Virus record (IMG/VR): IMGVR_UViG_3300020154_000003
Coordinates: 186,001 to 250,000 of that record
DNA: 64,000 bases
Direction: 5' to 3' (one strand)
Shown here: piece by piece, positions 97 to 60,667 of the stretch
Position numbering within the stretch: the stretch's first letter is position 1
How the letters are laid out: each line of letters starts with the position of its first letter
The notes under the pieces: generated by a model
Told to the model about the DNA's origin: nothing
Seen by the model: only the letters and a program-made list of their open reading frames with translations
The model's database searches: none
Program-made: the position numbers and the translations under genes

Positions 97-324
97 TTAA
101 TTAAGGATGTCTGCCATTACTTTCTCATATTCCTCATGTTCGCGGTTCAACTCTTCACACAATCTATTTAACTGATCACGGTGTGGAGAATTGCCAGCAG
201 AGAACCTTGATTTTCTAACGGTTACTTCCTCCACAACCTTCAATCCGTTCATCGTATCTAAAATACCAAAGGTTCGATAATTATGTATGGTCACCGACCT
301 AAGGATATATCTTTTATTCACCAT
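97..324 (-). CDS. Paralog family B small protein carrying the C-terminal tag
   Basis: RY...ILD...LNREHEEYEKVMADIL, shared with six other ORFs. Confidence 0.7.
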   Translation of the reverse strand: MVNKRYILRSVTIHNYRTFGILDTMNGLKVVEEVTVRKSRFSAGNSPHRDQLNRLCEELNREHEEYEKVMADILN

Positions 325-559
325 TATAATGAGGCCAACAACCTAATTCCATCAACTCTTTATTATACCACCTATATTCCCTATTCATCTGCTTACACAT
401 AAATTTAATATTTCTATGCCCATCATCTTCATAATTGAATATATTAAAAAATTCTTCCTTATGAATTATTTGATATTGATTATAAGTATCTCTGAGGATG
501 TAACGATGTTTTGAATCAACCATTTCCACATCCACAACATATCTTTCTTCAACTCCCAT
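314..559 (-). CDS. Paralog family B small protein
   Basis: RY...LRDT...MNREYRWYNKELMEL. Confidence 0.65.
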   Translation of the reverse strand: MGVEERYVVDVEMVDSKHRYILRDTYNQYQIIHKEEFFNIFNYEDDGHRNIKFMCKQMNREYRWYNKELMELGCWPHYNGE

Positions 560-1218
560 TCAACAACTACAGATTGACAATAGCACAATTATAAAAAACA
601 TGAGTAGACCTGACAGGCCAGCAAGACCGAGTATCCAAGGATTGGTTTCCTTTTCCAGTTTTTTGCCTTCCATGTTTATCTATCTTGAAGGGATGCAGTC
701 ACAATAAATTTAGAGGCAATCATCTTGCAGCGTTTCAGCTTAACAAAATTGAATGTGGTTATTGTTGTGGTTTCTCCATCGCGATCACTCACTATCCAAG
801 AATCCTTAGTTTTAGTTCTTGTCTTCCAATTATTCTGATGGAGTTTTGTATATCCGTTACCTCTACGATGTTCCTTTTCCTTTTTATCAACATACTTCCT
901 AGCAGCCTTTCCATTTTCAAATAGAAGGTCACCCATTACGTATGAAGCAGAATGCTCGTAATCAGTTTTATAGTTTGAGTGTTGGATGTGTTTGAGAATA
1001 ACAACCATTACTTAAAATTTAGGATCAAATCTTTCGTCAACATAGGTTCGTCTTGCCCTTGCAGCCATGTTACAGCGATCCTGTATCATTTGGTGCAGCT
1101 TCCAAGCATCTTCTTCTGCAAGGTAGATCACTAATGCTGTTTGACCATCCTCTTGGGTAAAGGTCATCTTGATCTTTCCTTGGTTGTAATCGACTGCTTC
1201 TGGATTTAACATGAGCGT

Positions 1219-1944
1219 TTACTTTATATGTTTTTGAAACCATTCATCGGAAGACATGTGTGTAATTTGGAACTTCTCAGGTGCAGTTCTATTTCCTTCC
1301 ATTGCCTTGATGAAGTTGTGATACTTATAGCAGAAGGTAATCACTTCGTCTCGCGTGTATTTTTCTTCTTCCTCAACACGATGGAGAGTAGTTTTATAGT
1401 TGGAATTTAGTTTGACTTCATATCGCCACTTATATCTATGCTCAACCCTATCCTCTGGATTAGGGTGATACACCTTTTCACATTCTACCAATACCTTATC
1501 ACCATTCTTCATCTTACCATCTACAATTGCTTGCATATGTTCAGGTGAGAATTGTTCAGGTAGGACAAGTACCTTCTTTCCCATTCCATTTGGTTCAAAA
1601 GCACCATAGTCTTTATCTTCTTTAGTATGAATTATATCGCCAGTGAAAGGCATCCACCATTTATCACCTGACTCTATATTCTCTGTTTCAGAAATGATAA
1701 TTGGTTTGTAGCATTTACCTTTAGAATCACCATCTGAGTTTATACCTAGGAATGGCTCACAGAGAAATAATCTACCGTCCGATTTCTTAAAAATTAGATA
1801 TTTATTTTCCTCCCAATGTGTTTCAATAAGAAGAAGTTTACCTTCAACAACAGGCACATCCATCGTTACCATTTGAGGTAGTCCATCATTATTATCAGGA
1901 TATGTGATGGTGTGATTTTTAATGTTTCTAACCTTAATTCCCAT
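1219..1944 (-). CDS. Paralog family A hypothetical phage protein
   Basis: GKLLLIE...KPIIISETE.IE.GD.W...KKVLVLPEQFS.E.MQAI.DGK.K.GDKVLVECE. Confidence 0.8.
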   Translation of the reverse strand: MGIKVRNIKNHTITYPDNNDGLPQMVTMDVPVVEGKLLLIETHWEENKYLIFKKSDGRLFLCEPFLGINSDGDSKGKCYKPIIISETENIESGDKWWMPFTGDIIHTKEDKDYGAFEPNGMGKKVLVLPEQFSPEHMQAIVDGKMKNGDKVLVECEKVYHPNPEDRVEHRYKWRYEVKLNSNYKTTLHRVEEEEKYTRDEVITFCYKYHNFIKAMEGNRTAPEKFQITHMSSDEWFQKHIK

Positions 1945-2764
1945 GTCTTCCTTTTATGAAGTTTTTCTTTTTAAATTCTTCCCATGCAGTTTCATCACTA
2001 CGATCTCCAATAATACCAACAAAGGATTTGGGATTGCAGAAGAATGCTACTTTCACCATTTCCTCACCATACATTTGCTCATTATTTTCTGCAAATGCTT
2101 GAAACTTATCTCCAAGGTAATGCAGGCAAGCGGCCTTAACCATTTCCTTATCGGGATGGTTTAAAAGATAGATTCTAAGATCAGCAATTGTGTTGAATTG
2201 ATCAATGGAAACTTTTGTAGCGACAGTGGGGTATAATGTTAGAGGCGACTTAATTGGATATTGATAAACATATCCATTATATTCGTGGCCAGTACATTCG
2301 ATCATCAATTCTTGCTGATCTTTGAGTTTTTCATCAATGATTGCTTGAAGTTGTTCGTTTGAGAAATTTTCAGGGAGTGCTAACACCTTAGCTGACCAGA
2401 CAGTAACTGTAGGAGATTTACGTCTTATATCATCCATCAACCTTCCCATTTGATTATAGTGATCCGCTTCACGTTCATCCGCAACTTGTTTGAGCAAATG
2501 ATTCGATCTTTTGGCATTACCGTATACCACCCAATCACCGACTTCAATCTTTTCTGTTTCGGAAATAATGATTGGTGCAAACCATAATAATGGGTGAGTA
2601 ATATTACCACCAACAAAATCTTTGAAATAGCAGGTCGTTGTATATCCTCGTTGGTCAACCAGCAGAAGTTTTCCATCCGCTACCAGTACTTGTTCATTAG
2701 GAGGTAAAGCCTTTCCATCAGGCGACTCTCTGAGCCTCCTTGTTACTTTAGCTTTGATGTCCAT
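1934..2764 (-). CDS. Paralog family A hypothetical phage protein
   Basis: DGKLLLVD...PIIISETEKIEVGDW...KVLALPENFS.EQLQAI. Confidence 0.8.
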   Translation of the reverse strand: MDIKAKVTRRLRESPDGKALPPNEQVLVADGKLLLVDQRGYTTTCYFKDFVGGNITHPLLWFAPIIISETEKIEVGDWVVYGNAKRSNHLLKQVADEREADHYNQMGRLMDDIRRKSPTVTVWSAKVLALPENFSNEQLQAIIDEKLKDQQELMIECTGHEYNGYVYQYPIKSPLTLYPTVATKVSIDQFNTIADLRIYLLNHPDKEMVKAACLHYLGDKFQAFAENNEQMYGEEMVKVAFFCNPKSFVGIIGDRSDETAWEEFKKKNFIKGRHGN

Positions 2765-3344
2765 GAGGTTTTTTTTTCAAATGTTCCTTATAAAATTTTT
2801 CAATCTTATCATACCACACGCCTTTTACGTAACCGTTTTCATATCCATCAACGTATGCTTGACGAATTAATTCTTTTACTTCGTCCGTGGTGTAAGTTGG
2901 TTCTTCATTATCGATAGGCAGGAATGTGACATGACCTTCAGAATTCAGTTTGACATAATATTGCACAGGAAGATACCAAGATTTATCCTCAACCTCTTCA
3001 CAGGCAACAACTACCTTTTGGTTTGGTGTGTATTCACCATCTTCAATGGCTTGAAGATACTCTGCTGATAAGTGTTCAGGAAGGACAATAACTTTCTTGC
3101 AATGAGTATGATAACCCTTTGAAGTGATTGTCGTTACATCATGTTCGCTTGCAGTTCTTATGCCAAGGGTAGTGTCTTTAATGTTAACCCATGAATCACC
3201 GAGCGTGATCGGTTCTGTTTCGGAGATGATTACGGATTTAACAAAATCTCCACCATCCTCAATAAGAAGGAATACGCCATCAGTCACAAAACACTTTGTT
3301 TTGTACCTTTGGTATTGTCTGGTATTTTTTACTTGAATTGCCAT
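2748..3344 (-). CDS. Paralog family A hypothetical phage protein
   Basis: DGVFLLIE...VIISETEPITLGD.W...KKVIVLPEHLS.EYLQAI. Confidence 0.8.
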   Translation of the reverse strand: MAIQVKNTRQYQRYKTKCFVTDGVFLLIEDGGDFVKSVIISETEPITLGDSWVNIKDTTLGIRTASEHDVTTITSKGYHTHCKKVIVLPEHLSAEYLQAIEDGEYTPNQKVVVACEEVEDKSWYLPVQYYVKLNSEGHVTFLPIDNEEPTYTTDEVKELIRQAYVDGYENGYVKGVWYDKIEKFYKEHLKKKPHGHQS

Positions 3345-3775
3345 ACTTTATCGTGGTACAAAAATAAGATCGTAACCCATCTTAGAGAGGATATTTTTCA
3401 ATCGCTTGATCTTTTCTTTTACTGTAGTATTTTGATCGTCATTAATTACGATTGCTTCATTTACTTCAGAAGTATTTCTAATCGTTCTACGCATTGAATT
3501 GGTGTGTGCATCAATATGATGATCAGCATATGTAAGATCAGGTATCAGCTTATTTAAGCTGTCAGGTGACACATTCGAAAGTAGATGTCTATCGGTAATG
3601 GTCTCATCCAATTGCATAGAGAATTGACCAAGGCAACACATGAACCCTTGCTCATTTAGAAGTCTGGTACACCCATTACCTCTGGCTGTTTCACTGGTGT
3701 TAATAGTTTCTTCTTGCTCCGTGCCACAACGCCAGAATTCCTCAAACAAAAGAAGGGGTTTCAGTTTAGTTTTTT

Positions 3776-4144: not shown

Positions 4145-4206
4145 TGGTGAAGGGAGAGGGAATCGAACCCCCGATCAAAAACTCTAACCAACTGAGTTAT
4201 CCCTTC
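4145..4206 (-). ncRNA. 62-nt tRNA-like RNA lacking the entire anticodon arm
   Basis: GAAGGGA/TCCCTTC acceptor stem + ACCA, D arm ACTC-AGTTGGTTA-GAGT, 8-nt linker TTTTGATC, T arm GGGGG-TTCGATT-CCCTC. Confidence 0.8.
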
Positions 4207-5330: not shown

Positions 5331-5618
5331 TTAGCCATGTTGTAAATTTAGATAGGTCATAATTGTTTCATTATATTGTTTAAATTCAGTGTTTAACGCA
5401 CGTATAAGAACACCTCTGTTTCCGTTTTGTTCAAACTCCCATGCTTCATCTGCAGGGATGACAAATTTGTTTGTGTGTGTATCTAATATATCCCAAATTT
5501 GCTCGGTACGTCTATTCTTTTTGTTTCTTATTACGTATCGAGACTGTGTTTTATATCGTCTCAATCCTTTACGTATCAATCTCTGCTTACGATACTCATC
5601 AACAATATCTTCATACAT
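5331..5618 (-). CDS. Paralog family B small protein
   Basis: RYVIR...WDILDTHTNKF...LNTEFKQYNETIMTYL. Confidence 0.7.
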   Translation of the reverse strand: MYEDIVDEYRKQRLIRKGLRRYKTQSRYVIRNKKNRRTEQIWDILDTHTNKFVIPADEAWEFEQNGNRGVLIRALNTEFKQYNETIMTYLNLQHG

Positions 5619-6059: not shown

Positions 6060-6365
6060 TTACGCCCTCACCAAAAAATCATACAAATTTATTTCATATG
6101 CAAAATGCTCGTTGCTCAGTGCAACATATAAGTTCTCCAATTCACCACGCTTATGATGTACCCAACCATCTACTTCATGTAAGAGAAATTTATTTTGAAA
6201 ATTATCCCATATGTCATACCATTTCTTTTCATCAGCATATGTGGTATCGTAAAATTTTCTCTCGGTATATTTATAGCGTCTCAGTTCTTGAGGCATGTAC
6301 TGACAAGTTATGACGATTGCCCTAACCTCTTCCAACTTCTCTAATACCTTTTCATAATCATTCAT
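6060..6365 (-). CDS. Paralog family B small protein
   Basis: RYKY...YDIWDNFQNKF...LSNEHFAYEINLYDFL. Confidence 0.7.
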   Translation of the reverse strand: MNDYEKVLEKLEEVRAIVITCQYMPQELRRYKYTERKFYDTTYADEKKWYDIWDNFQNKFLLHEVDGWVHHKRGELENLYVALSNEHFAYEINLYDFLVRA

Positions 6366-6591
6366 CTTTCAGATAATCATGTATTGTTTTTTCGTAATGA
6401 TAGTGTCCATCATTAAGAAACGACATCAAACCACTTATCTTTGATCTATGTCGTTCATGTCCTTCTTCAGCACTCAACACAAATTCTTTTTTAAATCGAT
6501 CCCATACGTCATCCCAATGAATTATACAATCATGTTCGTCATATCCTTGCCTTGACATCCAGACATACCTAACGTATTCAAAGTGGGGCAT
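6358..6591 (-). CDS. Paralog family B small protein
   Basis: RYVW...DDVWDRFKKEF...LNDGHYHYEKTIHDYL. Confidence 0.7.
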   Translation of the reverse strand: MPHFEYVRYVWMSRQGYDEHDCIIHWDDVWDRFKKEFVLSAEEGHERHRSKISGLMSFLNDGHYHYEKTIHDYLKDE

Positions 6592-6801: not shown

Positions 6802-7035
6802 TCATTTTCTTAAGAAATAATAAACGTCAAGATTGTAATACGTATACTCCATCAGGTTGTACTTGGCTGATAGTTGAATTTCTCTGCTTCGATAAATGGG
6901 TCTGTCTTCGAGAATATCCTTAGCAAATCTTTGCCATAACGATAATTGAGTTTTCCTTTTTAAGGATGGACAAGCATCGAAAAATGTTTTGATGTCATCA
7001 AGCACGTCATCGACTGATTGATTTGTGTGTATCAT
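6802..7035 (-). CDS. Hypothetical protein carrying the C-terminal tag
   Basis: Ends EYTYYNLDVYYFLRK. Confidence 0.55.
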   Translation of the reverse strand: MIHTNQSVDDVLDDIKTFFDACPSLKRKTQLSLWQRFAKDILEDRPIYRSREIQLSAKYNLMEYTYYNLDVYYFLRK

Positions 7036-7856: not shown

Positions 7857-8468
7857 TTAACGATTTTTCTTATAACTATCATTATTAACTACGTTTTCTT
7901 CAAACCAACGATTGATTGTATTCTGTCCTAAGATATTACCAATTTGCCATTCTTTCGCAAATTCGACTGCGATAACTTTCATTTCATCAAGCGAGTATAA
8001 TCTTGGCAAACGAATGATTACATGCCCATTCATTAGTTCAACTCCCCAACAACCAACAGCACCGTAACATTCGATCAATAATTTATCACCTTTTCTCACA
8101 TTACCATCTGCGATCATTTGTAAATCTTTGAATGAAAAGTGATCCGGGAGTGCAAGAACCTTAAACCATCCTAAGGACTTCGCTTCTTCAGGAGGAAAGT
8201 TATTATCACATCTTTCAAGACTGCCGTTATTGTAATAAATCCAATCACCTATTTCAATCGGTTCTTTCTCCGAAATGAGTAACGGTTTTAAATATTTACC
8301 AATTCCCTTAATACGACCGTTGGAGGAAGTGAAGGCAACCCTCAAGGTCGAATTAGTTGCGTACCACAATTTAGCTTCTTCTGGTTGACATTCGATTAAA
8401 ACAAGTTTACCCTCTGCCATTGGGCAATTGGGTAGATCAGGTAAGGTAATGGTATGTTTTACTTTCAT
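7857..8468 (-). CDS. Paralog family A hypothetical phage protein
   Basis: EGKLVLIE...KPLLISEKEPIEIGDW...KVLALPDHFS..DLQMI.DG. Confidence 0.8.
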   Translation of the reverse strand: MKVKHTITLPDLPNCPMAEGKLVLIECQPEEAKLWYATNSTLRVAFTSSNGRIKGIGKYLKPLLISEKEPIEIGDWIYYNNGSLERCDNNFPPEEAKSLGWFKVLALPDHFSFKDLQMIADGNVRKGDKLLIECYGAVGCWGVELMNGHVIIRLPRLYSLDEMKVIAVEFAKEWQIGNILGQNTINRWFEENVVNNDSYKKNR

Positions 8469-8798: not shown

Positions 8799-9269
8799 AT
8801 GGATGAAAAACAGGATTTCGACCTAACTTCTGAAGATGTTCGAGAGGCCAGACGCATGGTCGATGAGGCTAGTGCCATCATAACAATTTATCGTCCCAAT
8901 GGTGGCGATATGAGTATTACCGTGGGCAAACCCGCTAAAAAAGTATTGGTACGCTATTTTCACCTGCTGACAGGGATAGAGTACACACGGGTTAAGGAAT
9001 CCTTAATTAACTATGGTACTAACGATTATTATGATGGGAATGAGATCGATGGTATTAAGAAGATATTTTTTAAAAATACGAAAACTAGATTTTATCACAC
9101 AATAAACGATATTAATCTCTATTACAAGAAAATCATATGTTTATCAAGATATGAATTTTTGGTTTACACCTTAAGTGAGGATGAAAACAGAGAACGTGAA
9201 ATGAAGAAAAAGTTTCGGTTGGATTATGTCGCTACTATGAGGGAATTCATTGCTCAACCAAAAAGTTAG
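8799..9269 (+). CDS. Hypothetical protein carrying the C-terminal tag (start moved to ATG 8799)
   Basis: Ends FRLDYVATMREFIAQPKS; the TTG start at 8790 overlaps the promoter. Confidence 0.6.
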   Translation: MDEKQDFDLTSEDVREARRMVDEASAIITIYRPNGGDMSITVGKPAKKVLVRYFHLLTGIEYTRVKESLINYGTNDYYDGNEIDGIKKIFFKNTKTRFYHTINDINLYYKKIICLSRYEFLVYTLSEDENREREMKKKFRLDYVATMREFIAQPKS

Positions 9270-9462
9270 AAATCTCTAACAGATAATACATATGATCAGC
9301 GACCAGCACCCTACTTTCAAGCGGATAATGAGTTTCAGAGATTAATTTGATGTGACTTCTGAATATAGTGTTTAATCGCAATTCAGTAATCACTTCATAA
9401 TTATTACTTAGAAGTTCGAAAACATTATGTGCTATGTTATTATGACAAGTAGGGATTGGCAT
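9247..9462 (-). CDS. Hypothetical protein carrying the C-terminal tag
   Basis: Ends DHMYYLLEISNFLVEQ. Confidence 0.55.
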   Translation of the reverse strand: MPIPTCHNNIAHNVFELLSNNYEVITELRLNTIFRSHIKLISETHYPLESRVLVADHMYYLLEISNFLVEQ

Positions 9463-11949: not shown

Positions 11950-11974
11950 TATACGCATTTCAATGAAAAATGTT
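11950..11974 (-). promoter_or_regulatory. Phage promoter AAC-N16-CGTATA
   Basis: Exact spacing; upstream of ORF 11637..11927. Confidence 0.75.
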
Positions 11975-12233
11975 ATTCAACTAAGAAATCATATAGATCG
12001 TTGACATAGCAAGCATAATTGTCATTCAACCCCCGCACCTCAGAATAGACATCGCGTTCAGATAGATTCTTTAATTGTCGTAATCTCGAATATTTAAAAT
12101 CATTCTTCTCCTTATCCCACACATCAACCCATTTGTTGCCATTCTGCAAATCTTCTCTGACTTTGGCAGAGTATCGATCTATAGGAAATCGTTTATAAAT
12201 AACGAAGGCTACATGTCTAAATTCCTCTTCCAT
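11973..12233 (-). CDS. Paralog family B small protein
   Basis: RYS...WVDVWDKEKNDF...LNDNYACYVNDLYDFL. Confidence 0.7.
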   Translation of the reverse strand: MEEEFRHVAFVIYKRFPIDRYSAKVREDLQNGNKWVDVWDKEKNDFKYSRLRQLKNLSERDVYSEVRGLNDNYACYVNDLYDFLVE

Positions 12234-12494
12234 TTACCGTGTCAATACATAAAATAACGTATTCACATAATCAGTGAATGCAACATTCATTTGGTGAACC
12301 CTATCCTTCAATATTGGACGCAAAGGCAGGTTTGCGATCTCATCTTCTGTCAAATAAACAGACTGATCAACCCAAGTTTGTCTCACTTTATCATACACGT
12401 CAAGGTAACTGCTACCATCACGATGATCGTAACGTTCTCGTATACAATACCTTTCTAAGGGTATCTCATCGAATATTTGTTCAATAGCATCCAA
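12234..12494 (-). CDS. Paralog family B small protein
   Basis: RYCIR...LDVYDKVRQTW...MNVAFTDYVNTLFYVL. Confidence 0.7.
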   Translation of the reverse strand: MDAIEQIFDEIPLERYCIRERYDHRDGSSYLDVYDKVRQTWVDQSVYLTEDEIANLPLRPILKDRVHQMNVAFTDYVNTLFYVLTR

Positions 12495-13523: not shown

Positions 13524-14213
13524 TCATGTGGTTTGAGTTTTCATCCAGTCTTTAAAATTTTCATATACGTAATCCCAATCAGGATGTGTGATTTTTTCTC
13601 TCGCAGCATTAAAGGCTTTTTCTGCGATAGATAGTGGAACCATAATTTCTTGGAGAGGAATTATTCTAACCTCGTTACGTGAATTTAGTTTCACAACGAA
13701 ACCATCATATCCTTTCCAGTTATCGGTATCATAATCGCAAAGTACCGAGATACAACCGATGCGTCCATCGTTAGCACATACACCCTCAACCTCAAGCAAC
13801 ATCACGTCCTGATCTTTCATTCGTTCAATCTCCATATCACGGAAATGGTCAAATGAAAAGTTCTCTGGTTTAGCTAGTACTTTTTTCCATCCATACAACA
13901 TGGCGTGAGATACTGAGTTATGGGAATCAATAAGAAAAAATTGATTCTTGGCACCAACACCGTTCATGTTATATACATAATCCCCGATTTGAGGTTGTTC
14001 AGTGTCTGATACGAGCAGTGGCTTTAGAAATTTATTACCGATGTGTACCATGTGGTTTGATCGGATGTCGAAATCACAATTCTCTTTCAAGACTTCAACA
14101 GTCCAATTCACAAACACCAATCTAACATCAACAACATACAATGCTGGTCGTTTAAGGCGACCGTTTCCACGATCACTAGATAATCGAGCCTCCTTGATTT
14201 TTATCTCATTCAT
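13524..14213 (-). CDS. Paralog family A hypothetical phage protein
   Basis: KPLLVSDTEQPQIGDY...WKKVLAKPENFS...VKLNS. Confidence 0.75.
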   Translation of the reverse strand: MNEIKIKEARLSSDRGNGRLKRPALYVVDVRLVFVNWTVEVLKENCDFDIRSNHMVHIGNKFLKPLLVSDTEQPQIGDYVYNMNGVGAKNQFFLIDSHNSVSHAMLYGWKKVLAKPENFSFDHFRDMEIERMKDQDVMLLEVEGVCANDGRIGCISVLCDYDTDNWKGYDGFVVKLNSRNEVRIIPLQEIMVPLSIAEKAFNAAREKITHPDWDYVYENFKDWMKTQTT

Positions 14214-14692: not shown

Positions 14693-15052
14693 TTAATTAA
14701 CTGAAATAAATTTCATAACCGCCCTATCATATTCTTTGAAGCCCTCACTGTTTTTAATGCTAACCCATTTCAAATAATCGTCAACTTTTTCAACGTCTTC
14801 TTTTCTTATCACATTCACTGTGATAAGCTTTTTGTGATTCATAAATTTATTCACATCGATAACTCCTTTGATGGTTGCCACATTTAATTTTCTTAATTGT
14901 GGTGTAGTAGCTGTCGTAATCACAAATCCCTTTGGTGGCTTACCTGATTTAACACAATCAATAAGAACCTCATTACTTAGTTTCAATTCTTCTATTGACG
15001 AATATATGATCTTAGGTTTATTCTTTACCTTCTTCGCCATTTCAATTACCAA
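14693..15052 (-). CDS. Hypothetical basic protein carrying the C-terminal tag
   Basis: Ends GFKEYDRAVMKFISVN. Confidence 0.6.
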   Translation of the reverse strand: MVIEMAKKVKNKPKIIYSSIEELKLSNEVLIDCVKSGKPPKGFVITTATTPQLRKLNVATIKGVIDVNKFMNHKKLITVNVIRKEDVEKVDDYLKWVSIKNSEGFKEYDRAVMKFISVN

Positions 15053-16956: not shown

Positions 16957-17064
16957 GTTTATTGTGTTGTACGATTTCACGTTTATTGTGTTGTACGATT
17001 TCACGTTTATTATGCGGAATAAGCTAATTTACGTACAGCAGAATAAGCTAATATCAGTACAATT
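16957..17064. repeat. 24-bp-period direct repeats in the divergent intergenic region
   Basis: GTTTATTGTGTTGTACGATTTCAC x2 (16957-17004) + GTTTATT; GAATAAGCTAAT at 17017 and 17041. Confidence 0.85.
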
Positions 17065-20051: not shown

Positions 20052-20076
20052 AACCTTTTACTGCTGGTTCCGTATT
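20052..20076 (+). promoter_or_regulatory. Phage promoter, GTAACCTTTT subclass
   Basis: AAC-N16-CGTATT upstream of ORF 20098. Confidence 0.65.
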
Positions 20077-25820: not shown

Positions 25821-26702
25821 ATAACATAGTTAAACAATACAACTATGATTAACGAAATGGAAGCAGTACAGAATTCAATATACGGATGGCCAATCATCAT
25901 AATGGTGCTCATCGCATTCGTACTTAATTTCATCATCGCCCGGAAACTCACGATAGTTCTGATCAATCAGGGCTTTCTGAATCATAAGAGCACAAACCCG
26001 AAGGACATCGATACGTTTGAGAAGTGCGTTCTTGCTTGGTTTATACCCATAGTTGGTCTTGCTTCAATTTTCATGCTTTTGTTAACCCATTGTGTTATCC
26101 GCACTTTCAAGAGCACTCGTAAGAGACTATTCCTTAAACACGTCTAAGCATGGACACACCCGAAAAAGCCTTTAAACTCAAATCTATCTTGGACTTAGGT
26201 AGCATGACCAAGGAAGAATTAATAACCTACATTGACAGCCTTCACAACACCGTCCTGAATTATCAGTTGGTTATTGATCAGGTGGTCGCAAAAAATGTGA
26301 ATGTGAAAAGATGAGTGCAGACCAATTAACAATGTTCAGTATGGTGGCCATCATGGTCATGCTGTACATCTGCGAGAAGTTCTACGAAATCAAGCTAGAC
26401 CCTGAATTTCCTCCCGCATTGATAAAGATCAAGAATACGATCTTGAATTTTATCATAATTTTCATCACCTTTGTTCTTATATCCAAAGCACTATGAAACG
26501 GAAACTCGATAAAAGCGAAAGAACAGCCATATTGATTGCTGTTCTTTCTGCATTAGTATTGATCTCCATCATGGTGTTTACATAAATAGTACTGGCAGCG
26601 TCCACGATCTCACCAGACGCATTTTAAGCCGTTTCGCACACCAGTACTAGCAGAACAATGTTCCCTCGCATATCATCGAATTAGCACATTGTAATGCATT
26701 GT

Positions 26703-32383: not shown

Positions 32384-32547
32384 AAAGATGGGAAATTGTT
32401 ATTTATAATGAGATTGCTAATTTGTATGTACAACTAATGTACTATACACAAAATAAATACAAGATTTTTGTCCAAAAAATACCCACCTAAGGCAAAATCC
32501 CCACTTTTTTTCAAAAATATCATAAATTTATATAATATTTTATAAAT

Positions 32548-42369: not shown

Positions 42370-42382
42370 CTAGTAAATAAAA

Positions 42383-42416
42383 ATACCCCACAACCAAAAA
42401 TTGTGGGGTTTAAAAA
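42383..42416 (-). terminator. Terminator-like hairpin between the ParB-like gene and the HNH-helicase
   Basis: CCCCACAA/TTGTGGGG followed by TATTTT on the minus strand. Confidence 0.55.
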
Positions 42417-43313
42417 TTATGAAAAAATAAAATGTTTATCTATTCTGGAACTACTCATTAATGACGACTGCCGTATAATTTTATCTGGAGTATTAAAATA
42501 TGTGTTATATGCTTTTATTATACAATCAACTAATACAGTAGGACTTGAACGCTTATCTTTTGTCTTGCTTAACTCTGCTACCAATAAGTTTCGACAAACC
42601 AAAACCATTCCATCGGCCTCCTTGCCAGTAAATAAACCTTTCCAAAATTCATTTTCGGCACGATCCCTATATATGCTGTGCATACGAGTATATAGCATCA
42701 TCCCGCCTATAAGTGATGGGCCAATAATCCTGAATGGCTCCCAATATTCTATTGATATTTTGTTTAATTCATCAGCATCTTCTTTCATTGATGCATAAAG
42801 TTTATATATGTCATCGGAACTAAGTCTATAAGCAACTAATGCACCGTCAACTTTTCTTGATTTTTGGTTTTCTGTACGACTGCGTAGTCTTGCATAAAAA
42901 GCGATTAGTGGTGCAATTCGTCTTCCATATGGAACTTGTTTTATATCAAACATGTCGCCTACAGTTCTTTTCGCTCCTATATCAATTGTGGTAAACACAT
43001 CCATAGGTAAACCCGTAACCACTAAAAAAGGTAAAGTTACGTTGGCTTCAATTAATGCAGTTAATCTGTGTTGTCCATCAAGTAATTTTCCTGACGTTAG
43101 TGAACCCGATATGCTGATTGTTTGACCATTCAGAGATTGAAAATTATTGTTTCTCATCAATTCAGCATATGTTTGAACATGATGAGGTTTGAGATTTCTA
43201 TTCATATCGTTTCTCGATAATAAATTATCAGCCAATTCAGGGGTGATGTTAATTATCTGAGAATTAATAGATGGCTTAGTTTGAGGTAAAGAATTAATTG
43301 TTAATGTATTCAT
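42417..43313 (-). CDS. ParB/Srx-like N-terminal domain protein
   Basis: ITPELA..LL.RN..NR.L....V..YA..M...LLDGQHRL.ALI...D.G..RT. Confidence 0.75.
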   Translation of the reverse strand: MNTLTINSLPQTKPSINSQIINITPELADNLLSRNDMNRNLKPHHVQTYAELMRNNNFQSLNGQTISISGSLTSGKLLDGQHRLTALIEANVTLPFLVVTGLPMDVFTTIDIGAKRTVGDMFDIKQVPYGRRIAPLIAFYARLRSRTENQKSRKVDGALVAYRLSSDDIYKLYASMKEDADELNKISIEYWEPFRIIGPSLIGGMMLYTRMHSIYRDRAENEFWKGLFTGKEADGMVLVCRNLLVAELSKTKDKRSSPTVLVDCIIKAYNTYFNTPDKIIRQSSLMSSSRIDKHFIFS

Positions 43314-43430: not shown

Positions 43431-43673
43431 TTACTTATCACCTATTTTCATTTTCAAGAAATCCTTTATTGATGAATTATAGTCTTTATAAGGAAGGGTT
43501 TCTCTTTCAAATATGATTAGTGGCGCACTACTCCCATCCTTTGGCATCAAAAATTCTTTCATGCGCCAACCTTCTTTGCTGTGAGTATCTAATGCGCATT
43601 TAATGGCCACTTTATACGGATCATACGCAATAGATAGTTCAACAACTTTATATTCGTACCTTTGTTCGTGCAT
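43431..43673 (-). CDS. DUF4177-like protein carrying the C-terminal tag
   Basis: YEYKVV...L...SKEGWR...IFERE, then PYKDYNSSIKDFL. Confidence 0.6.
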   Translation of the reverse strand: MHEQRYEYKVVELSIAYDPYKVAIKCALDTHSKEGWRMKEFLMPKDGSSAPLIIFERETLPYKDYNSSIKDFLKMKIGDK

Positions 43674-44513
43674 GATCAGTCTCTTTTTTTATAAAAACAC
43701 CACAATCCAAGGATGGGTAGGTATTTGACTTTTTTGTACTTCCTATATTTAGCAACCTGAGGATCATCAAACTGGCACAGCATCCATCCTGCCCAAATCT
43801 GCTGGTTAAACGTGAACTTCATTTTTCTTAGCTTTCTCTTGTTTATTTAGCGGAAGAATTTTACTGGATGGTTTCGGCAAGCCACCTAATTCGATAATTG
43901 TCGAATTACTTAATTTAGACAAGAAATACCATAAGGTCGCTTCATAGTAATCGTAGGTTTTGGAAGCGAGTTCTGGCCATCTTTCAACTGCCCAACGATG
44001 ATCTTTTGTGTAGTAGCCGTGCTTCCAACAATTGTGAGGACTGATAGATGAAATTAAATCCATAGTGTAATGCTCTATTCCCCATTGCTTAAATAATGGC
44101 GCAACGTTATTGGTGATGATGCTAAGAACATCATACTTTGTTTGAGGCTGATAATCATCTGCTTCAAGGCATTTGATCAAGTCGCCCCACACATCATCAG
44201 TGCGCTTGTACCAATGTTTGGAATAAAGGGCTACGTGTTTTAAATTCATTTTGATAATGCTTGTGTTACTGCAATTCTTCTATTGTTATCGTAGGTATTC
44301 GCACCATCCACATAACCAGCATCAAAACCAGTGCGGTACATGTCAAGGAGGCCAGCCATGATGGCTAATTTACGATGGGACTTAGAGGCTAGAGCATTTT
44401 GGGAGGAACTGAACGGTTTGAACGTTTCATCCATCTGGTCGGATAGGGCAATGATGCGTTCAGCTTTTTCAGCCAAAACTTCATCTGTGGGTTGATTCTC
44501 CATATTTGTATAT

Positions 44514-51719: not shown

Positions 51720-52034
51720 TCATAATTCATTTTGCGGATATAGCAGAGTCTGCAATTCTTTGAGATATTGATCTCTTTCATTATCCTCACTACTTCGAAC
51801 AACTCTCAAATCTCGTATTTTTATTGCAATTAAATCACCTTTCTTCCCTAGAGGTATTTTATTACCACGCTCATCTTTCAAGAGACGATCAACTTCGTCT
51901 GCAAGTCTTTCACACACCGCAACGTATCCATCACTGTCTGAATGGGTGACAGAGTGTAAACGATATGTCTCACTAGGAATACGATGACGATTATACGCCT
52001 GATCTAGTATCGATTTTGGGACTACTTTCATCAT
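51720..52034 (-). CDS. Hypothetical protein carrying the C-terminal tag
   Basis: Ends ERDQYLKELQTLLYPQNEL. Confidence 0.55.
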   Translation of the reverse strand: MMKVVPKSILDQAYNRHRIPSETYRLHSVTHSDSDGYVAVCERLADEVDRLLKDERGNKIPLGKKGDLIAIKIRDLRVVRSSEDNERDQYLKELQTLLYPQNEL

Positions 52035-53427: not shown

Positions 53428-53851
53428 ATGTTTTACGAATCGATAGTCAAATCCACTACGGATTCAAGAATGATTTCGTGCTCATTTTCCTTATACCTTT
53501 CCTTAATTAAGCGACTGCGAACGTTGTTGAAACTGGCATCTTTCGGGGCATAAATGAAGGCGTACTCAGAACCACGATCCGGGGTTCCTTGGGCATATTT
53601 AATATAATCGTATTTGAGTAACCTCGCTTTAATATCTTCTTCTTTCAGGAAGGAATTGATATTACTATTATATTCAACTGAGGCAGGGTCGGAATCTAAA
53701 AAAACAACCTCCCTTACGCCAAATATTGTTAATTTTCCAAAGTCTTCTTTACTATGTGGATTTAATGGCAGACATGCAATTGTATCGCCAACAAATCCAA
53801 CAAATTCATAAATATTCCATTCGGTAGTGTTGCCGTGAAAACGTAATCGTC

Positions 53852-54298
53852 TCATAAATCTTCAATTTCGCGTAGGTATTTTTGGCGTTCTTCGTGCCAT
53901 TTCTTAAACTCTTTTTTTATCATCAAATACAATAGCGATGCTAAGTAATCGTCAAAAGCTTCTAATGTGTTACCTGCTTTATCGAAAGAAACGCCCAAAC
54001 GTTTTGACTTCCAAAGATGCATCACGAAGACTCGGATTTCTTTCTTTTTATTTGGGACACTATCACTTATTTGTCTTTCGAATTTACAAACGTAATACGT
54101 TGTCCTCTTTTCTAAGTCGATACCGTCTTCAACAACAACACCACCATTAACAAGTGCGGAGCCTATTTTAGTATCTATCCGAATTTCACCTTTCCTAAAG
54201 ACTTGGAGATAGTAAATATCATTACGGTTAATAAGACGAGCACCTGATATTACTCGTAATAATACTTCTTTAACCGTATAGGTATCTACTTTTCCCAT
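53852..54298 (-). CDS. Hypothetical protein with a truncated C-terminal tag
   Basis: Ends ERQKYLREIEDL. Confidence 0.55.
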   Translation of the reverse strand: MGKVDTYTVKEVLLRVISGARLINRNDIYYLQVFRKGEIRIDTKIGSALVNGGVVVEDGIDLEKRTTYYVCKFERQISDSVPNKKKEIRVFVMHLWKSKRLGVSFDKAGNTLEAFDDYLASLLYLMIKKEFKKWHEERQKYLREIEDL

Positions 54299-54706: not shown

Positions 54707-55507
54707 TCATGATTTTAAAGCCTCTTTTTGTAACCTTTGTGATAATGCAGCATAGAATGTTTTAGGATTAATCTCGCTGAGTCCACCCATTTGTGCATCG
54801 TTAATTTCAACTACAACCCAACCACCGGAAACTTTTTCTGCAATATCGATCACATAAAAGTTAGAATATTTGCGAACCAAACTGCTCATCTTAGCTGCAA
54901 ATTGGTAACCTTCCAAACCTATTTCCCGTTCAGTCTCTTTAGCCATAGTCCAATAATAACCATAGGCAAGTAGTTTACCTTTATAGAAATAAAATCTATA
55001 TTCGTTTGTGAATGGCAATCCATTGTTCCCGATCTCATAAGTTACCAATGGCTCATACTTCCTAAACACTACACCTTGCGGAGCAATGAGTGAATCCTCA
55101 TTAAGTGCAAGCATGATCTCAATAGCACGTTGCTTGTTTTCAGCAAACATCAATCTATTCCACTCATGCTTCCGGGAATTAGTGCGACCCTTAACTACGA
55201 ATTGTGTCCCATCATCTGGCAAGTCTTGTGCCCTGAACCAAGTTTTGAAAGTATACTCAGACAAGGCTTCGTACCAATCAAAATTAGCAATCCAGTTGTA
55301 CTGACTGAAACTATTAACCAACTTAGAATCGTTATTGAGCAAATCAATTTCCAGTTCCTTATAAAATGGAAGTGTTGAGTATCTACCAAACACCAGAGAC
55401 TTCGCAGGAACTTCACTCCGATATTCATATACATCAAAGTATCGCTTTGCAATTTCGAATTCTTCTTCGGTGTTATAATCCTTGCGGAAAAGTAGTACTG
55501 GCTTCAT
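54707..55507 (-). CDS. ATP-grasp domain protein (DUF4343/R2K-like)
   Basis: FVVKG..NS.K, NEYRFYF, FYVIDIA....G.W.VVEIND.Q.GG. Confidence 0.75.
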   Translation of the reverse strand: MKPVLLFRKDYNTEEEFEIAKRYFDVYEYRSEVPAKSLVFGRYSTLPFYKELEIDLLNNDSKLVNSFSQYNWIANFDWYEALSEYTFKTWFRAQDLPDDGTQFVVKGRTNSRKHEWNRLMFAENKQRAIEIMLALNEDSLIAPQGVVFRKYEPLVTYEIGNNGLPFTNEYRFYFYKGKLLAYGYYWTMAKETEREIGLEGYQFAAKMSSLVRKYSNFYVIDIAEKVSGGWVVVEINDAQMGGLSEINPKTFYAALSQRLQKEALKS

Positions 55508-55869
55508 TCACTTAAAAATTTTTGTATTTTATCATCATATCTTCGTTCTTCCTCGAACGCAACAATTTCATCAAAACTCATGAAGCTGTAAAGAATCTTT
55601 AATTGCTTTACCTTATTGTAAAGACCAATTTCAGTTTCATCTATATCAACAACCAATTGATTTTGACCCAATAACAAATAGACAATTTCCTCACCCTTTC
55701 TCACGGTGAAAGCAACGTACTCTAATTTAGGATGCTTTCCACCGCCCCACAAATAATCATCCTTTTGTGCAAATTGTGTTAGATTCTTATTGACGTACCA
55801 CTCGTACCCTTCTTCATTAACGAAGTATGGCTTCTCACCATTTTCCCAAGGGTAGAAAAGAAGATTCAT
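55504..55869 (-). CDS. Hypothetical protein carrying the C-terminal tag
   Basis: Ends EERRYDDKIQKFLSE. Confidence 0.6.
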   Translation of the reverse strand: MNLLFYPWENGEKPYFVNEEGYEWYVNKNLTQFAQKDDYLWGGGKHPKLEYVAFTVRKGEEIVYLLLGQNQLVVDIDETEIGLYNKVKQLKILYSFMSFDEIVAFEEERRYDDKIQKFLSE

Positions 55870-58522: not shown

Positions 58523-59442
58523 TTCTTGTTTTCCAATTTTTTATTAATGGATGTTAAGAATAGAATGATCAGAGATAGACAAATAATAAGAACTATTTCA
58601 ATCCCCAAGAAGTGGTTAAGTAGTACTAATGCCAATACGAATAATATATATGACCAGTTCATGTTTTATTGTTTATAGTCATCATCCCCTTCGACAGCCT
58701 TGGGCCAAAGGTTTTCAGATATTTCCAAGATTTTATCAGATTGGTCTATAAGATTTTTAGCCCAATTGATAAATGTTTCTTTGCTTATGCCACTAATATC
58801 GCCATCGTGATTGACAATATACTCACCAATCCTTCTCGTGGTTGATGCACTTTGATTCAACCTAAACGCTTTGTCATATATCTCTCGTTGACTATACTCA
58901 ACTGTTACTCTTTTCTTTGCCATCTTGGATTGAATTAACTATTGTGTGTGCTTCCAGTAAATGCTGATCTATATCTTTGAGATTTTCTTGACATACACGG
59001 AATTCTTTCACAAAAATCTCATTAAAAGCTTCATCCTCAAAGGGCATATTGAATGACTCGTGGTGCGACAACATTGAAACCAAATTCATGAAAGGAGATA
59101 ATTTATTTCTTAACCTTTCAATAGGATCGTTTTCTGTTGGAGTTAAAATCTCTTGAAGAACAGGTTTAAGTTCAGCAAATATTTTGGCACCAATTTGATC
59201 TCCTTCGTCTGGCGTAATTACCTTAGAATTCCTCCACAAGGCATTAGATATTATTTCAATCCAATACTCATCATCTCTAATTAGTTGCGCTCTACTTATC
59301 ATTCCACTTGTTATTTTTCCTTCGATTCTTATTTCTGTTCTCTAATTTAAGTTTTGTCATTTTCAACTGATATTCCCAAAACTTAACACCATATTCATCT
59401 TTTTTGATTTGTGCTTGACGGATGTATTCGGGATATGTTACT

Positions 59443-60084
59443 TCAATTTTCTTTTTTAGATTCTTCGAGTCCTGCATTGAATGGATTTCCTAATTTTGTT
59501 ACAATAATTTGCATTTGTTCCATAGTCAAATCTCTGAAACTCCATTCACCCAATTCATTGGAGAATGGCTTGATGCGAGTCAACATCTCATTCATTGAGA
59601 TACTATAGGCTTTCGCTAACTTATCACATGAATTATTCATACACAGAGGATCAAGTTTCATCAGTCCCATATGTAATGCTGCTTCGAGTGCTTGGTGTCG
59701 TGTTGGAAATTCACCATTGTCGCCATACCAACCAGTACCATCTGTAATGTGGGTAGGGACTTTCTCACGACCATTCTCAGTGTCTATTTCCGTATATTTC
59801 CATTCTTCCTTAGGAAGATACCACAACACCTGCCAATTCCAATTAATACCATCAACATACATTTCAGGCATCAATGGTAGAAACATCCCCTTACCTTCGA
59901 GAAAGGCTATTGCATCATCCTGAGTGGGTCTAAATAAAACCTCATCGTCCGTTTCATCACCAACCCAATCATTGGATTCCGTAACCGTACCGTCAGTACG
60001 AATTAAGAAAGCATTTTCTGTAGGTTTATCGAAACCACGCTTTTGTAATAATTTAGCTACTTCTAACCCTACTAATTTGCTCAT
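59443..60084 (-). CDS. Hypothetical phage protein, paralog of 37631..38104
   Basis: LV..EVAKLL...GF...RPTQ..AI.FL...ALEAAL. Confidence 0.55.
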   Translation of the reverse strand: MSKLVGLEVAKLLQKRGFDKPTENAFLIRTDGTVTESNDWVGDETDDEVLFRPTQDDAIAFLEGKGMFLPLMPEMYVDGINWNWQVLWYLPKEEWKYTEIDTENGREKVPTHITDGTGWYGDNGEFPTRHQALEAALHMGLMKLDPLCMNNSCDKLAKAYSISMNEMLTRIKPFSNELGEWSFRDLTMEQMQIIVTKLGNPFNAGLEESKKEN

Positions 60085-60457
60085 AATGTTTATTTAATAT
60101 TCTTTGTAAATGTAGCGTTTCTCCTTCAACAATTTCACCATCCTTCGAAATTTGTTTGATTAAATTTACGGGATGATTTTCCAACGTGTTTAAAATCGAT
60201 AAATTATAGAATTCATCATCACCTAAACCAACTGGAAATATTTTTACGCCATGTATGTCATCCTTCAAAACAAGATCACCATCAAAATCAAGAAAACAGG
60301 ATTCATAGACCAGTCCGTCATATAGTACTGGTTTGGTTGAATCTTGGAATTGAACAATTTCAATATCCACCCTAGGCTCGATGATTTGTGGTTTTAAATT
60401 TTTCTTGAATTTGCTGACTATTTCTTTTAATAAAGCTGACACGACTTTCACGGCGAT

Positions 60458-60667
60458 TTATGTTTCACTTACAAAATTAATTACTTCAGATATATAAGCT
60501 TGATAGAGTTCCAGACGAACAATATAAAGATGTTCCATCCTCAATGACTCTTTCAATCTTTTGTATTTTGGAACATTCATACAATCATCACATTCCAACC
60601 CATCAGCAACAATTCCAAATTCGCTAGGACGTTTCCCACAAATGAAACATTCACAATTTATTTCCAC
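60458..60667 (-). CDS. Small CxxC/CxxC Zn-finger protein carrying the C-terminal tag
   Basis: CFIC...CDDC; ends LYQAYISEVINFVSET. Confidence 0.55.
   Translation of the reverse strand: MEINCECFICGKRPSEFGIVADGLECDDCMNVPKYKRLKESLRMEHLYIVRLELYQAYISEVINFVSET

What the first reader, a model, noticed from the sequence alone, without database searches (positions are those of the whole stretch)
97..60667. Shared C-terminal peptide tag on about 16 small proteins, many otherwise unrelated
Seen: the motif Y-x3-[ILVM]-x2-[FYILV]-[LIV], usually with H/Y/F/R 3-4 residues before the Y, sits within about 8 residues of the C-terminus. Instances are 97 (YEKVMADIL), 314 (YNKELMEL, partial), 5331 (YNETIMTYL), 6060 (YEINLYDFL), 6358 (YEKTIHDYL), 6802 (YNLDVYYFL), 8799 (YVATMREFI), 9247 (YLLEISNFL), 11973 (YVNDLYDFL), 12234 (YVNTLFYVL), 14693 (YDRAVMKFI), 43431 (YNSSIKDFL), 51720 (YLKELQTLL), 53852 (YLREIEDL, partial), 55504 (YDDKIQKFL) and 60458 (YISEVINFV). 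It also occurs internally in 53433 (YNSNINSFL). The carriers include family B, a DUF4177-like protein, a Zn finger and orphans. None of the recognisable enzymes carries it. The i, i+4, i+7, i+8 spacing forms one face of an amphipathic helix. Inference: this is a portable addressing signal that docks diverse cargo onto one hub, for example capsid loading (as with the N-terminal T4 capsid-targeting sequence), a phage compartment, or a protease or adaptor.
Basis: partly seen in the sequence, partly recalled or inferred. Interest (0 to 1): 0.88.

Follow-up and report, generated by a model that had tools for sequence, protein, structure and literature searches.

The report
Shared C-terminal helix on phage proteins
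About twenty small, mostly unrelated accessory proteins of an uncultivated 366-kb jumbo phage end in the same conserved 13-residue tyrosine-containing helix; it looks like a transferable interaction module, but its binding partner is unknown.

Summary
Y-x3-[ILVM]-x2-[FYILV]-[LIV] lies 0-8 residues from the stop in 16 of 149 window proteins, plus two partial copies, against 1.1 expected. Internal matches are at chance.

- The signal is specific to Tyr, to the 3+2 spacing and to the C-terminus. It is encoded at protein level, not DNA level.
- It recurs in held-out flanks of the same 366-kb jumbo-phage genome (5 of 88 genes against 0.7 expected). It is absent from 120 genes of three related jumbo phages.
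- Seven window carriers (ten in the sampled genome) form one paralog family, a beta-hairpin plus a long helix, and the motif ends that helix.
- The other carriers (a DUF4177 protein, a Zn-ribbon, helical and larger orphans, a 232-aa protein) share only the last ~13 residues: E-[FYH]-x2-Y-[NE]-x-[ET]-[ILV]-x2-[FY]-[LI].
- Orthologs keep motif positions (82% identity) better than interleaved (56%) or trailing residues (34%). DUF4177 homologs at 36-40% identity in other phages keep the tail.

Best reading: a transferable C-terminal helical interaction module. A common partner is inferred, not shown, and nothing points to capsids specifically. No flexible linker precedes the tail, so a shared structural or oligomerisation helix spread by gene fusion remains a serious rival.

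The parts
103..141 (-). tail EHEEYEKVMADIL of gene 97-324 (75 aa), paralog family
341..379 (-). degenerate tail EYRWYNKELMELG of gene 314-559 (81 aa), paralog family; 8 residues follow
5349..5387 (-). tail EFKQYNETIMTYL of gene 5331-5618 (95 aa), paralog family
6072..6110 (-). tail EHFAYEINLYDFL of gene 6060-6365 (101 aa), paralog family
6370..6408 (-). tail GHYHYEKTIHDYL of gene 6358-6591 (77 aa), paralog family; AF2 model: end of helix 49-76
6811..6849 (-). tail EYTYYNLDVYYFL of gene 6802-7035 (77 aa), non-family orphan; only the tail aligns to the family profile; ortholog in L001 keeps it
9213..9251 (+). tail FRLDYVATMREFI of gene 8799-9269 (156 aa), the only + strand gene in a minus-strand block; shares a 33-aa C-terminal module with a flank carrier
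9259..9297 (-). tail DHMYYLLEISNFL of gene 9247-9462 (71 aa), non-family orphan
11982..12020 (-). tail NYACYVNDLYDFL of gene 11973-12233 (86 aa), paralog family
12243..12281 (-). tail AFTDYVNTLFYVL of gene 12234-12494 (86 aa), paralog family
14705..14743 (-). tail GFKEYDRAVMKFI of gene 14693-15040 (115 aa), non-family; its 51%-identical ortholog keeps F..Y...[LV]..F[LI]
43455..43493 (-). tail PYKDYNSSIKDFL of gene 43431-43673 (80 aa); the DUF4177 domain covers residues 6-58 and the tail helix 60-78 lies outside the Pfam model
51741..51779 (-). class-2 tail ERDQYLKELQTLL of gene 51720-52034 (104 aa)
53855..53890 (-). class-2 partial tail ERQKYLREIEDL at the very end of gene 53852-54298 (148 aa)
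55513..55551 (-). tail EERRYDDKIQKFL of gene 55504-55869 (121 aa); its stop overlaps the start of the R2K ATP-grasp gene by 4 nt
60470..60508 (-). tail LYQAYISEVINFV of gene 60458-60667 (69 aa), CxxC...CxxC Zn-ribbon followed by a long helix
19991..20029 (+). weak strict match KLHFYSMAIRHLI in gene 19484-20053 (189 aa); lacks E at -4 and an aromatic at -3; possibly chance
26249..26287 (+). weak strict match TVLNYQLVIDQVV in gene 26150-26314 (54 aa); possibly chance
43806..44249 (-). gene with an internal tail-like segment (TYDYYEATLWYFL, Y at residue 102 of 147), followed by a 37-residue basic extension; conserved in the L013 ortholog
53433..53855 (-). gene with an internal copy (YNSNINSFL, residues 62-70 of 140)

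Best explanation
The tail is a transferable 13-residue C-terminal helical interaction module, consensus E-[FYH]-x2-Y-[NE]-x-[ET]-[ILV]-x2-[FY]-[LI]. It has been placed on several unrelated small accessory proteins of this jumbo-phage lineage.

It presents one hydrophobic face (positions -3, 0, +4, +7, +8) edged by semi-conserved polar residues (-4, +1, +3). That face would bind the same groove on a common partner. The partner could be a conserved phage or host protein, or the tails of the other carriers.

Shown: the module exists, is at protein level, is under selection, and sits on unrelated scaffolds. Inferred: that it binds a common partner. Unknown: the identity of the partner and what binding achieves (sorting, packaging, recruitment or inhibition).
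For: - C-terminal enrichment is specific to Tyr, to the spacing and to the terminus.
- It was validated on held-out flanks and is absent from control phages.
- Third codon positions are nearly free, so this is not a DNA element.
- Non-family carriers align to the family profile, and to each other, only through the last 11-33 residues.
- The two predicted folds differ in topology.
- Across ortholog pairs, motif positions are 82% identical, against 56% for interleaved and 34% for trailing residues.
- The only DUF4177 relatives found in 1.84 billion representatives (36-40% identity, from other phages) all keep the tail. Y62, Y65, N66 and I69 are as invariant as the domain core.
- A distant phage locus (L010) has the tail on a second, unrelated 108-aa protein.
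- Position 0 is always Tyr, while -3 and +7 exchange H/F/Y and F/Y/I/L/V. F in place of Y shows no C-terminal enrichment (1 against 1.8 expected). This points to a specific contact rather than generic packing.
- Precedent for interchangeable C-terminal docking peptides on unrelated phage proteins: T4 gp43, gp33 and gp55 (PMC2988020).
Against: - No partner was identified.
- The tail is not tethered by a flexible linker. It is the end of a longer helix, or starts directly after the last strand, and AlphaFold2 predicts it with pLDDT 76-91. That is more typical of a helix packed on its own domain.
- About half of the instances come from one paralog family.
- Without that family, the blind pattern search is not significant after multiple-test correction.
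- The hydrophobic moment is only modestly above background (0.38 against 0.29).
- The motif was defined after seeing these same sequences.
Confidence: 0.45

Rival explanations
1. The tail is a shared structural or self-association helix with no common partner. It would be an amphipathic C-terminal helix that completes each small protein's own hydrophobic core or makes homodimers. It would have spread because new genes in these tightly packed, translationally coupled arrays arise by fusing novel 5' parts to the retained 3' end of a resident family gene. The conservation would then reflect folding rather than addressing.
For: - In the family the motif ends a 28-residue helix whose hydrophobic stripe runs on at -7, -10 and -14 (9/9, 9/9 and 8/9). 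pLDDT there is 84-91.
- In the DUF4177 protein the helix begins one residue after the last strand.
- No flexible linkers precede the tails.
- Carriers are confined to small-gene blocks where the family is expanded, and many overlap the next gene by 4-11 nt.
- Carriers are so small (54-232 aa, median 95) that every helix is probably needed for a core.
Against: - Unrelated folds would not be expected to need the same Tyr, nor the same flanking E and N. F, W or L in place of Y is not seen at C-termini.
- No DNA similarity remains that would document fusion events.
- In non-family carriers the upstream helix shows no common phase, so only the last 13 residues are shared.
Confidence: 0.3
2. The tail is a capsid-loading or compartment-sorting signal in the strict sense the first reader proposed. 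It would dock cargo to a scaffold, the capsid interior or a phage compartment, so that the carriers are packaged or sequestered.
For: - There is analogy only. T4 internal proteins are diverse anti-defence proteins that share only a targeting sequence (PMC3012670). Encapsulin cargo uses C-terminal peptides that dock on an HK97-fold shell (PMC8229669).
- The carriers are small, diverse accessory proteins.
Against: - No virion data exist.
- The carriers lie in arrays beside replication and host-takeover genes, not beside structural genes.
- No protease-site pattern is visible, no linker precedes the tail, and no chimallin or tubulin was seen in the 101 kb sampled.
- Known phage-nucleus import uses folded surfaces rather than terminal signals (PMC11087766).
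Confidence: 0.12
3. The tail is a C-terminal degron. An exposed aromatic-rich helix end would be recognised by a host or phage protease and would limit the lifetime of early accessory proteins.
For: C-terminal position; hydrophobic and aromatic content; an M28 peptidase gene lies in the window.
Against: - The extreme C-terminal residues are the least conserved part (34% identity) and vary from 0 to 8 in number, unlike terminal degrons.
- The conserved part is helical and internal to the tail.
- There is no evidence of instability.
Confidence: 0.06
4. The finding is largely an artefact of paralogy plus chance. One family supplies the signal, and the non-family matches are coincidences picked up by a regex fitted after the fact.
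For: - Seven of the 16-18 window carriers are one family.
- The non-family signal alone fails multiple-test correction in a blind search.
- Two carriers (19484, 26150) look like chance matches.
Against: - Held-out flanks yield 3 further non-family carriers, among them a 232-aa protein whose tail opens with the same EFKQYN as family member 5331.
- Orthologs conserve the motif positions.
- Distant DUF4177 homologs keep the tail.
- Control phages have none.
Confidence: 0.05

Closest known systems
T4 capsid targeting sequence (CTS) of internal proteins
   Same: A short conserved peptide is the only feature shared by a highly diverse set of small accessory or anti-defence proteins of a large phage (PMC3012670).
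   Different: The CTS is N-terminal and is removed by the prohead protease. Here the peptide is C-terminal and helical, and no link to virions is known.
C-terminal sliding-clamp-binding epitopes (T4 gp43, gp33, gp55; PIP-box Qxx[I/L]xxFF; bacterial QL[S/D]LF)
   Same: Short hydrophobic/acidic peptides at the extreme C-terminus of unrelated proteins dock into one hydrophobic cleft of a hub, and they are interchangeable (PMC2988020; PMC9690074). Counted from the residue after Tyr, the h-x2-aromatic spacing is the same as in the PIP-box.
   Different: Q occurs at position 1 in only 1 of 18 tails. The last position is aliphatic rather than aromatic. The invariant Tyr has no PIP counterpart. No flexible linker precedes the tail. 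The carriers are not replication or transcription factors.
Bacterial microcompartment encapsulation peptides
   Same: They are terminal amphipathic helices of about 15-20 residues on unrelated cargo. The hydrophobic face binds the shell, and a short hydrophilic terminal fragment often follows (PMC4594438). Here 0-8 poorly conserved, mostly polar residues follow the motif.
   Different: Encapsulation peptides lack sequence conservation and are joined by a poorly conserved linker. Here the sequence is conserved and there is no linker. No microcompartment shell genes were seen.
Encapsulin cargo-loading peptides
   Same: A C-terminal peptide docks diverse cargo on the inner face of an HK97-fold (phage-capsid-like) shell (PMC8229669).
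   Different: Cargo-loading peptides are about 10 residues, extended rather than helical, and follow Ala/Pro/Gly-rich linkers. None of these features applies here.
Helix-in-groove motifs with i, i+4, i+7 spacing (for example transactivation-domain peptides bound by MDM2; own knowledge, not tested)
   Same: Three to four hydrophobic side chains on one helical face at the same spacing.
   Different: The system is eukaryotic and the motifs lie in disordered regions. The resemblance is in geometry only.

Membership tests
T4-type capsid targeting sequence | located at the N-terminus of the cargo | tested here: not met
   All tails are 0-8 residues from the C-terminus. Only 1 regex match lies within the first 12 residues of any non-family protein.
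T4-type capsid targeting sequence | cargo is found inside virions and is cleaved by the prohead protease | not testable with these tools
   This needs virion mass spectrometry, and the phage is uncultivated.
T4-type capsid targeting sequence | the short peptide is the only feature shared by diverse small proteins | tested here: met
   similarity is restricted to the tail.
PIP-box / clamp-binding motif | conserved Gln at motif position 1 | tested here: not met
   The residue after Tyr is E/N/V/L/D/I/S; Q occurs once in 18 tails.
PIP-box / clamp-binding motif | aliphatic residue at position 4 and two aromatic residues at positions 7-8 | tested here: not met
   Positions 4 and 7 fit ([ILVM]; F/Y in most). 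Position 8 is L/I/V in every tail.
PIP-box / clamp-binding motif | a sliding clamp is encoded by the phage or host and binds the peptide | not tested
   Only 101 of 366 kb were read, no clamp gene was looked for, and the host is unknown.
T4 gp45-binding C-terminal epitope | the epitope is joined to the protein by a divergent flexible linker | tested here: not met
   No Pro/Gly-rich or low-complexity stretch precedes the tails. The helix is contiguous with the domain.
BMC encapsulation peptide | terminal amphipathic alpha-helix of 15-20 residues | tested here: inconclusive
   The tail is helical in both AlphaFold2 models. The mean hydrophobic moment is 0.38, against a background of 0.29 and a 95th percentile of 0.56.
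BMC encapsulation peptide | poorly conserved linker between the peptide and the functional domain; no sequence conservation among peptides | tested here: not met
   There is no linker, and the tail sequence is conserved.
Encapsulin cargo-loading peptide | about 10-residue C-terminal peptide after an Ala/Pro/Gly-rich flexible linker | tested here: not met
Membrane-targeting amphipathic helix (MinD/FtsA type; own knowledge) | basic polar face | tested here: not met
   The mean net charge of positions -3 to +7 (the 11 residues scored) is -0.3, and the polar positions are mostly D/E/N.
C-terminal degron of the terminal-residue type | conserved residues at the extreme C-terminus | tested here: not met
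   Residues after the motif are 34% identical between orthologs and vary from 0 to 8 in number.
Pfam DUF4177 (gene 43431-43673 only) | match to PF13783 above the gathering score over the whole model | tested here: met
   31.4 bits against a cut-off of 25. Residues 6-58 match model positions 1-65 of 65, and the tail lies outside the model.
Single paralog family covering all carriers | full-length homology among all carriers | tested here: not met
   This holds for 7 window genes, 3 flank genes and their orthologs. All other carriers align only by the tail.

The most novel reading that the evidence does not exclude
This jumbo-phage lineage has a genuine C-terminal 'zip code'. One receptor would read the Tyr-containing helix and sort twenty or more otherwise unrelated accessory proteins to one destination: the virion interior, a replication compartment or a host hub. 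New cargo would be enrolled simply by acquiring the 13-residue tail. This would be the first linear C-terminal sorting signal described for phage proteins.
Probability: 0.2. Interest if true: 0.85.

Novelty: new variant of a known kind. Interest (0 to 1): 0.6.

Why it matters
Linear signals that sort or dock phage proteins are very rare. The T4 capsid targeting sequence and the clamp-binding tails are the textbook cases, and searches for import signals in nucleus-forming jumbo phages found none (PMC11087766).

A conserved, transferable C-terminal helix on many orphan proteins would do three things:
- It would give a handle on the function of about twenty genes that have no homologs in Pfam, PHROGs or NCBIfam.
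- It would point to a hub protein in a jumbo-phage lineage that is otherwise uncharacterised.
- It could serve as a portable tag for loading or recruiting foreign proteins.

If the tail is instead only a shared structural helix spread by gene fusion, it still documents how new small genes are built in hyperplastic phage regions.

Tried and rejected
1. A DNA-level element (promoter, RBS or recombination cassette) under the tails. Rejected: third codon positions carry 0.05-0.47 bits, Leu and Ile codons vary, and the downstream DNA shows no similarity.
2. All carriers being one family. Rejected by BLAST, iterated HMM and hhalign, with and without tails.
3. A generic property of phage C-termini. 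Rejected: 0 of 120 genes in three related jumbo phages, and the residue, spacing and orientation controls are negative.
4. V in place of Y as extra carriers. Those 7 hits are heterogeneous, including transmembrane segments.
5. Carriers differing in pI, charge or aromatic content from other small proteins. They do not.
6. Expression timing from T4-type late promoters or sigma-70 promoters. Neither is enriched.
7. Back-translated tail patterns scanned in IMG/VR. The first gave 2 chance hits. The second gave 13 hits: 2 self hits, one homologous ~185-aa family with the string at its N-terminus, and one 47-codon ORF. This is chance level.
8. A search of the related jumbo phages (L005-L007) for a counterpart of the carrier-rich array. 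None was found.
9. A fold search of the family model against the PDB. No match reached E <= 0.001.
10. A fold search against viral models, and any fold search of the DUF4177 model. The tool was not accepting jobs.
11. Measuring burial of the motif side chains. Model coordinates are not exposed, so only pLDDT and secondary structure could be used.
12. An early statement that 6802 and 12234 lack orthologs in L001. This was wrong: the tool's gene list had missed them (one search corrects).
13. A possible link to the adjacent R2K ATP-grasp, a predicted protein-peptide ligase (PMC4431377). It rests on a single adjacency and was not pursued.

Full report
**Context**

The window is positions 186001-250000 of a 366,038-bp contig (IMGVR_UViG_3300020154_000003 = Ga0196965_1000004). 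This is an uncultivated jumbo phage with 37% G+C.

It has no close relative among 50,697 deposited phage genomes. Its Dda-like helicase is at most 41% identical to anything there. A 548-aa structural-like protein is 44-55% identical to proteins of a Maribacter phage and of Synechococcus phage Syn5.

I called 149 genes with a self-trained codon model. Most are small, tightly packed minus-strand genes with no family assignment.

Recognisable genes in the window:
- Dda-like helicase, an HNH-helicase fusion, a homing-endonuclease-like protein and an RNA ligase.
- NT5C and an R2K ATP-grasp.
- A pentapeptide-repeat protein, an M28 peptidase and NADAR.

The flanks add rIIB-like, GmrSD_N, RNA ligase 1, Macro, PTH2 and a sigma factor.

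The strict regex Y-x3-[ILVM]-x2-[FYILV]-[LIV] matches 32 times. Seventeen matches (in 16 genes) lie within 10 residues of a C-terminus, against 1.1-1.2 expected from shuffles. The internal rate equals the shuffled rate.

Two weaker matches (19484, 26150) were missed.

**It is not only paralogy**

- Seven carriers (97, 314, 5331, 6060, 6358, 11973, 12234) are full-length homologs, with or without the tail.
- With them removed, 10 genes still carry a C-terminal match against 2.3 expected by position.
- The excess disappears if Tyr is replaced by any other residue, if either gap is changed, or if the motif is reversed. It is absent at N-termini.
- A PSSM trained only on the family puts 8 of its top 20 non-family hits at C-termini (P = 2e-4).
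- A blind enumeration of four-position patterns ranks Y...h..[FW]h first of about 72,000 with all proteins. Without the family it ranks ninth of about 68,000, which is not significant after correction on its own.
- A three-position enumeration did not find the motif.

**Independent validation**

- In 88 genes from flanks of the same genome that played no part in defining the motif, 5 end in it, against 0.70 expected (P = 8e-4). Three of these are non-family, among them a 232-aa protein ending LEFKQYNKSVKSFVNA.
- In 120 genes around the RNA ligase of three related jumbo phages (56-72% identical ligase), none does.
- Carriers are confined to small-gene blocks at roughly contig 166-201 kb and 229-247 kb. 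Blocks of larger genes have none.

**The signal is at protein level and under selection**

- Across the 18 tails, second codon positions of the hydrophobic residues are fixed and third positions carry 0.05-0.47 bits. Leu and Ile use many codons, and the DNA downstream has nothing in common.
- In nine ortholog pairs from a related phage (loci L001 and L013, proteins P0007, P0009 and P0011; about 45-95% identical), the five motif positions are 82% identical. The interleaved positions are 56% identical, the rest of the proteins 66%, and the residues after the motif 34%.
- The 14693 ortholog, 51% identical overall, keeps F..Y...[LV]..F[LI].

**What is shared, and by whom**

An alignment of 27 tails gives the consensus E(-4)-[FYH](-3)-x2-Y(0)-[NE]-x-[ET]-[ILV](+4)-x2-[FY](+7)-[LI](+8).

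A possible second flavour, R-x2-Y-[LIM]-[KR]-E-[LI]-x2-[LF]-[LI], occurs on 51720, 53852 and two flank genes.

In the family, the hydrophobic stripe continues upstream at -7, -10 and -14 (9/9, 9/9 and 8/9). In the other carriers nothing upstream of -4 is shared.

hhalign of the family profile against 127 other window proteins aligns 43431, 6802, 14693, 51720, 9247 and 8799 only through profile columns 56-74, which is the tail. 43431 is the best-scoring non-family protein.

With the last 22 residues removed, the non-family carriers show no similarity to one another. 8799 and one flank carrier share a 33-residue C-terminal module and nothing else.

No carrier has a PHROG or NCBIfam family. Only 43431 has a Pfam domain above threshold: DUF4177, residues 6-58, covering the whole model and leaving the tail outside.

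**Structure**

- AlphaFold2 on the family (15 sequences, 6358 first) gives pLDDT 86.5. The model has strands 9-17 and 23-31, helix 41-46 and helix 49-76, and the motif is the last two turns.
- No solved structure resembles the family model.
- The DUF4177 carrier (5 sequences) gives pLDDT 83.4. The model has strand 6-12, helix 20-33, strands 37-42 and 52-58, then the tail helix 60-78 directly after the last strand.
- The two scaffolds therefore differ in topology, and profile-profile comparison aligns only the tails.
- In neither model, nor by sequence in the other carriers, is there a flexible linker before the tail.

**Age and spread**

An exhaustive phmmer search of 1.84 billion representatives with 43431 found four proteins. 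The three distant ones (36-40% identical) all end in EY-x2-YN-x-EI-x2-[FY][LI]. Y62, Y65, N66 and I69 are as invariant as the DUF4177 core.

These proteins lie on fragments of other low-G+C phages that share several further genes with the window. In one of them (L010), an unrelated 108-aa neighbour ends VEFEIYNKNIINFIE.

The family itself is known only from this phage and its close relatives. Scans of IMG/VR with two back-translated tail patterns found nothing beyond chance.

**Interpretation**

The data show a conserved, transferable C-terminal helix on unrelated scaffolds. I favour an interaction module that presents one hydrophobic face, edged by E(-4), N/E(+1) and E/T(+3), to a common partner or to the other carriers. 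Confidence is 0.45.

The main reasons:
- Tyr at position 0 is invariant on every scaffold, while its neighbours on the same face vary freely.
- The flanking polar residues recur across scaffolds.
- The tail persists over long divergence.

The strongest rival (confidence 0.30) is a structural or self-association helix spread by fusing new 5' parts to a resident gene's 3' end. The missing linker, the confident helix prediction and the family's dominance speak for it.

Capsid loading, compartment sorting or proteolysis are not specifically supported.

**Comparison with known systems**

- The tail works most like the interchangeable C-terminal clamp-binding epitopes of T4 gp43, gp33 and gp55 (PMC2988020). 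It is also like the T4 capsid targeting sequence, which is the only feature common to diverse internal proteins (PMC3012670).
- It shares the h-x2-aromatic spacing of the PIP-box (PMC9690074). It lacks the Gln, the second aromatic residue and the linker, so it is not a member.
- It differs from microcompartment encapsulation peptides (PMC4594438) and encapsulin cargo-loading peptides (PMC8229669). It has sequence conservation and lacks a linker.
- Known phage-nucleus import uses folded surfaces, not terminal signals (PMC11087766).

**Limits**

- Only 101 of 366 kb were read.
- Model coordinates could not be inspected.
- Two fold searches could not be run.
- The host and the expression timing are unknown.

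Noticed in passing
window 4148-4206 (-): A 59-nt tRNA-like RNA (45.4 bits to Rfam tRNA) with intact acceptor, D and T arms, but with the whole anticodon arm replaced by 3 nt. ARAGORN does not call it. It lies in an intergenic gap.
   Followed up: partly
window 63730-63818 (-): An 89-nt tRNA (44.3 bits) with 22 nt where the 7-nt anticodon loop should be, possibly a small intron. ARAGORN misses it.
   Followed up: partly
window 54707-55507 (-): An R2K-clade ATP-grasp (a predicted protein-peptide ligase with unknown targets, PMC4431377). Its start overlaps the stop of tail carrier 55504-55869 by 4 nt. It is a single adjacency; a link to the tails is pure speculation.
   Followed up: partly
window 1219-1944, 1934-2764, 2748-3344, 7857-8468, 13524-14213 (-): A second paralog family of 198-276-aa proteins (pairwise E-values down to 2e-19) with no Pfam or PHROG match. 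It is interleaved with the tail carriers.
   Followed up: no
window 40276-43313 (-): The HNH-helicase fusion (697 aa) and the adjacent 298-aa phrog_5931 protein are missing from the close relative L013, between the orthologs of 43431 and 40021. This looks like an insertion or deletion of a mobile block.
   Followed up: no
window 8799-9269 (+): A single + strand gene with good coding score inside a long minus-strand block. It converges on 9247-9462, with the two 3' ends overlapping by 23 nt, and both genes carry the tail.
   Followed up: no
window 16957-17011: A perfect 24-nt tandem repeat (2.3 copies) in the divergent intergenic region between the minus-strand block and the + strand block that starts at 17162. 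It is possibly regulatory.
   Followed up: no
window 32400-32407 (-): TATAAATA (the T4 late-promoter consensus) lies 17 nt upstream of the start of the 548-aa Syn5-gp53-like structural gene. The octamer is not enriched in the window overall.
   Followed up: no
window 43806-44249 and 53433-53855 (-): Tail-like segments occur internally. In 43806-44249 the Tyr is residue 102 of 147 and is followed by a basic 37-residue extension, and the segment is conserved in the ortholog. In 53433-53855 the copy spans residues 62-70 of 140. These may be carriers that gained a C-terminal extension or fused with a downstream gene.
   Followed up: partly
L020, L021, L023, L025-L027, L029-L031 (IMG/VR contigs): A conserved ~185-aa protein family in several low-G+C viral contigs begins with ...LEFKQYNFRI[IV][DN]F at its N-terminus. 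The string is the same as the tail of 5331 but at the opposite end. I counted it as one chance event.
   Followed up: no
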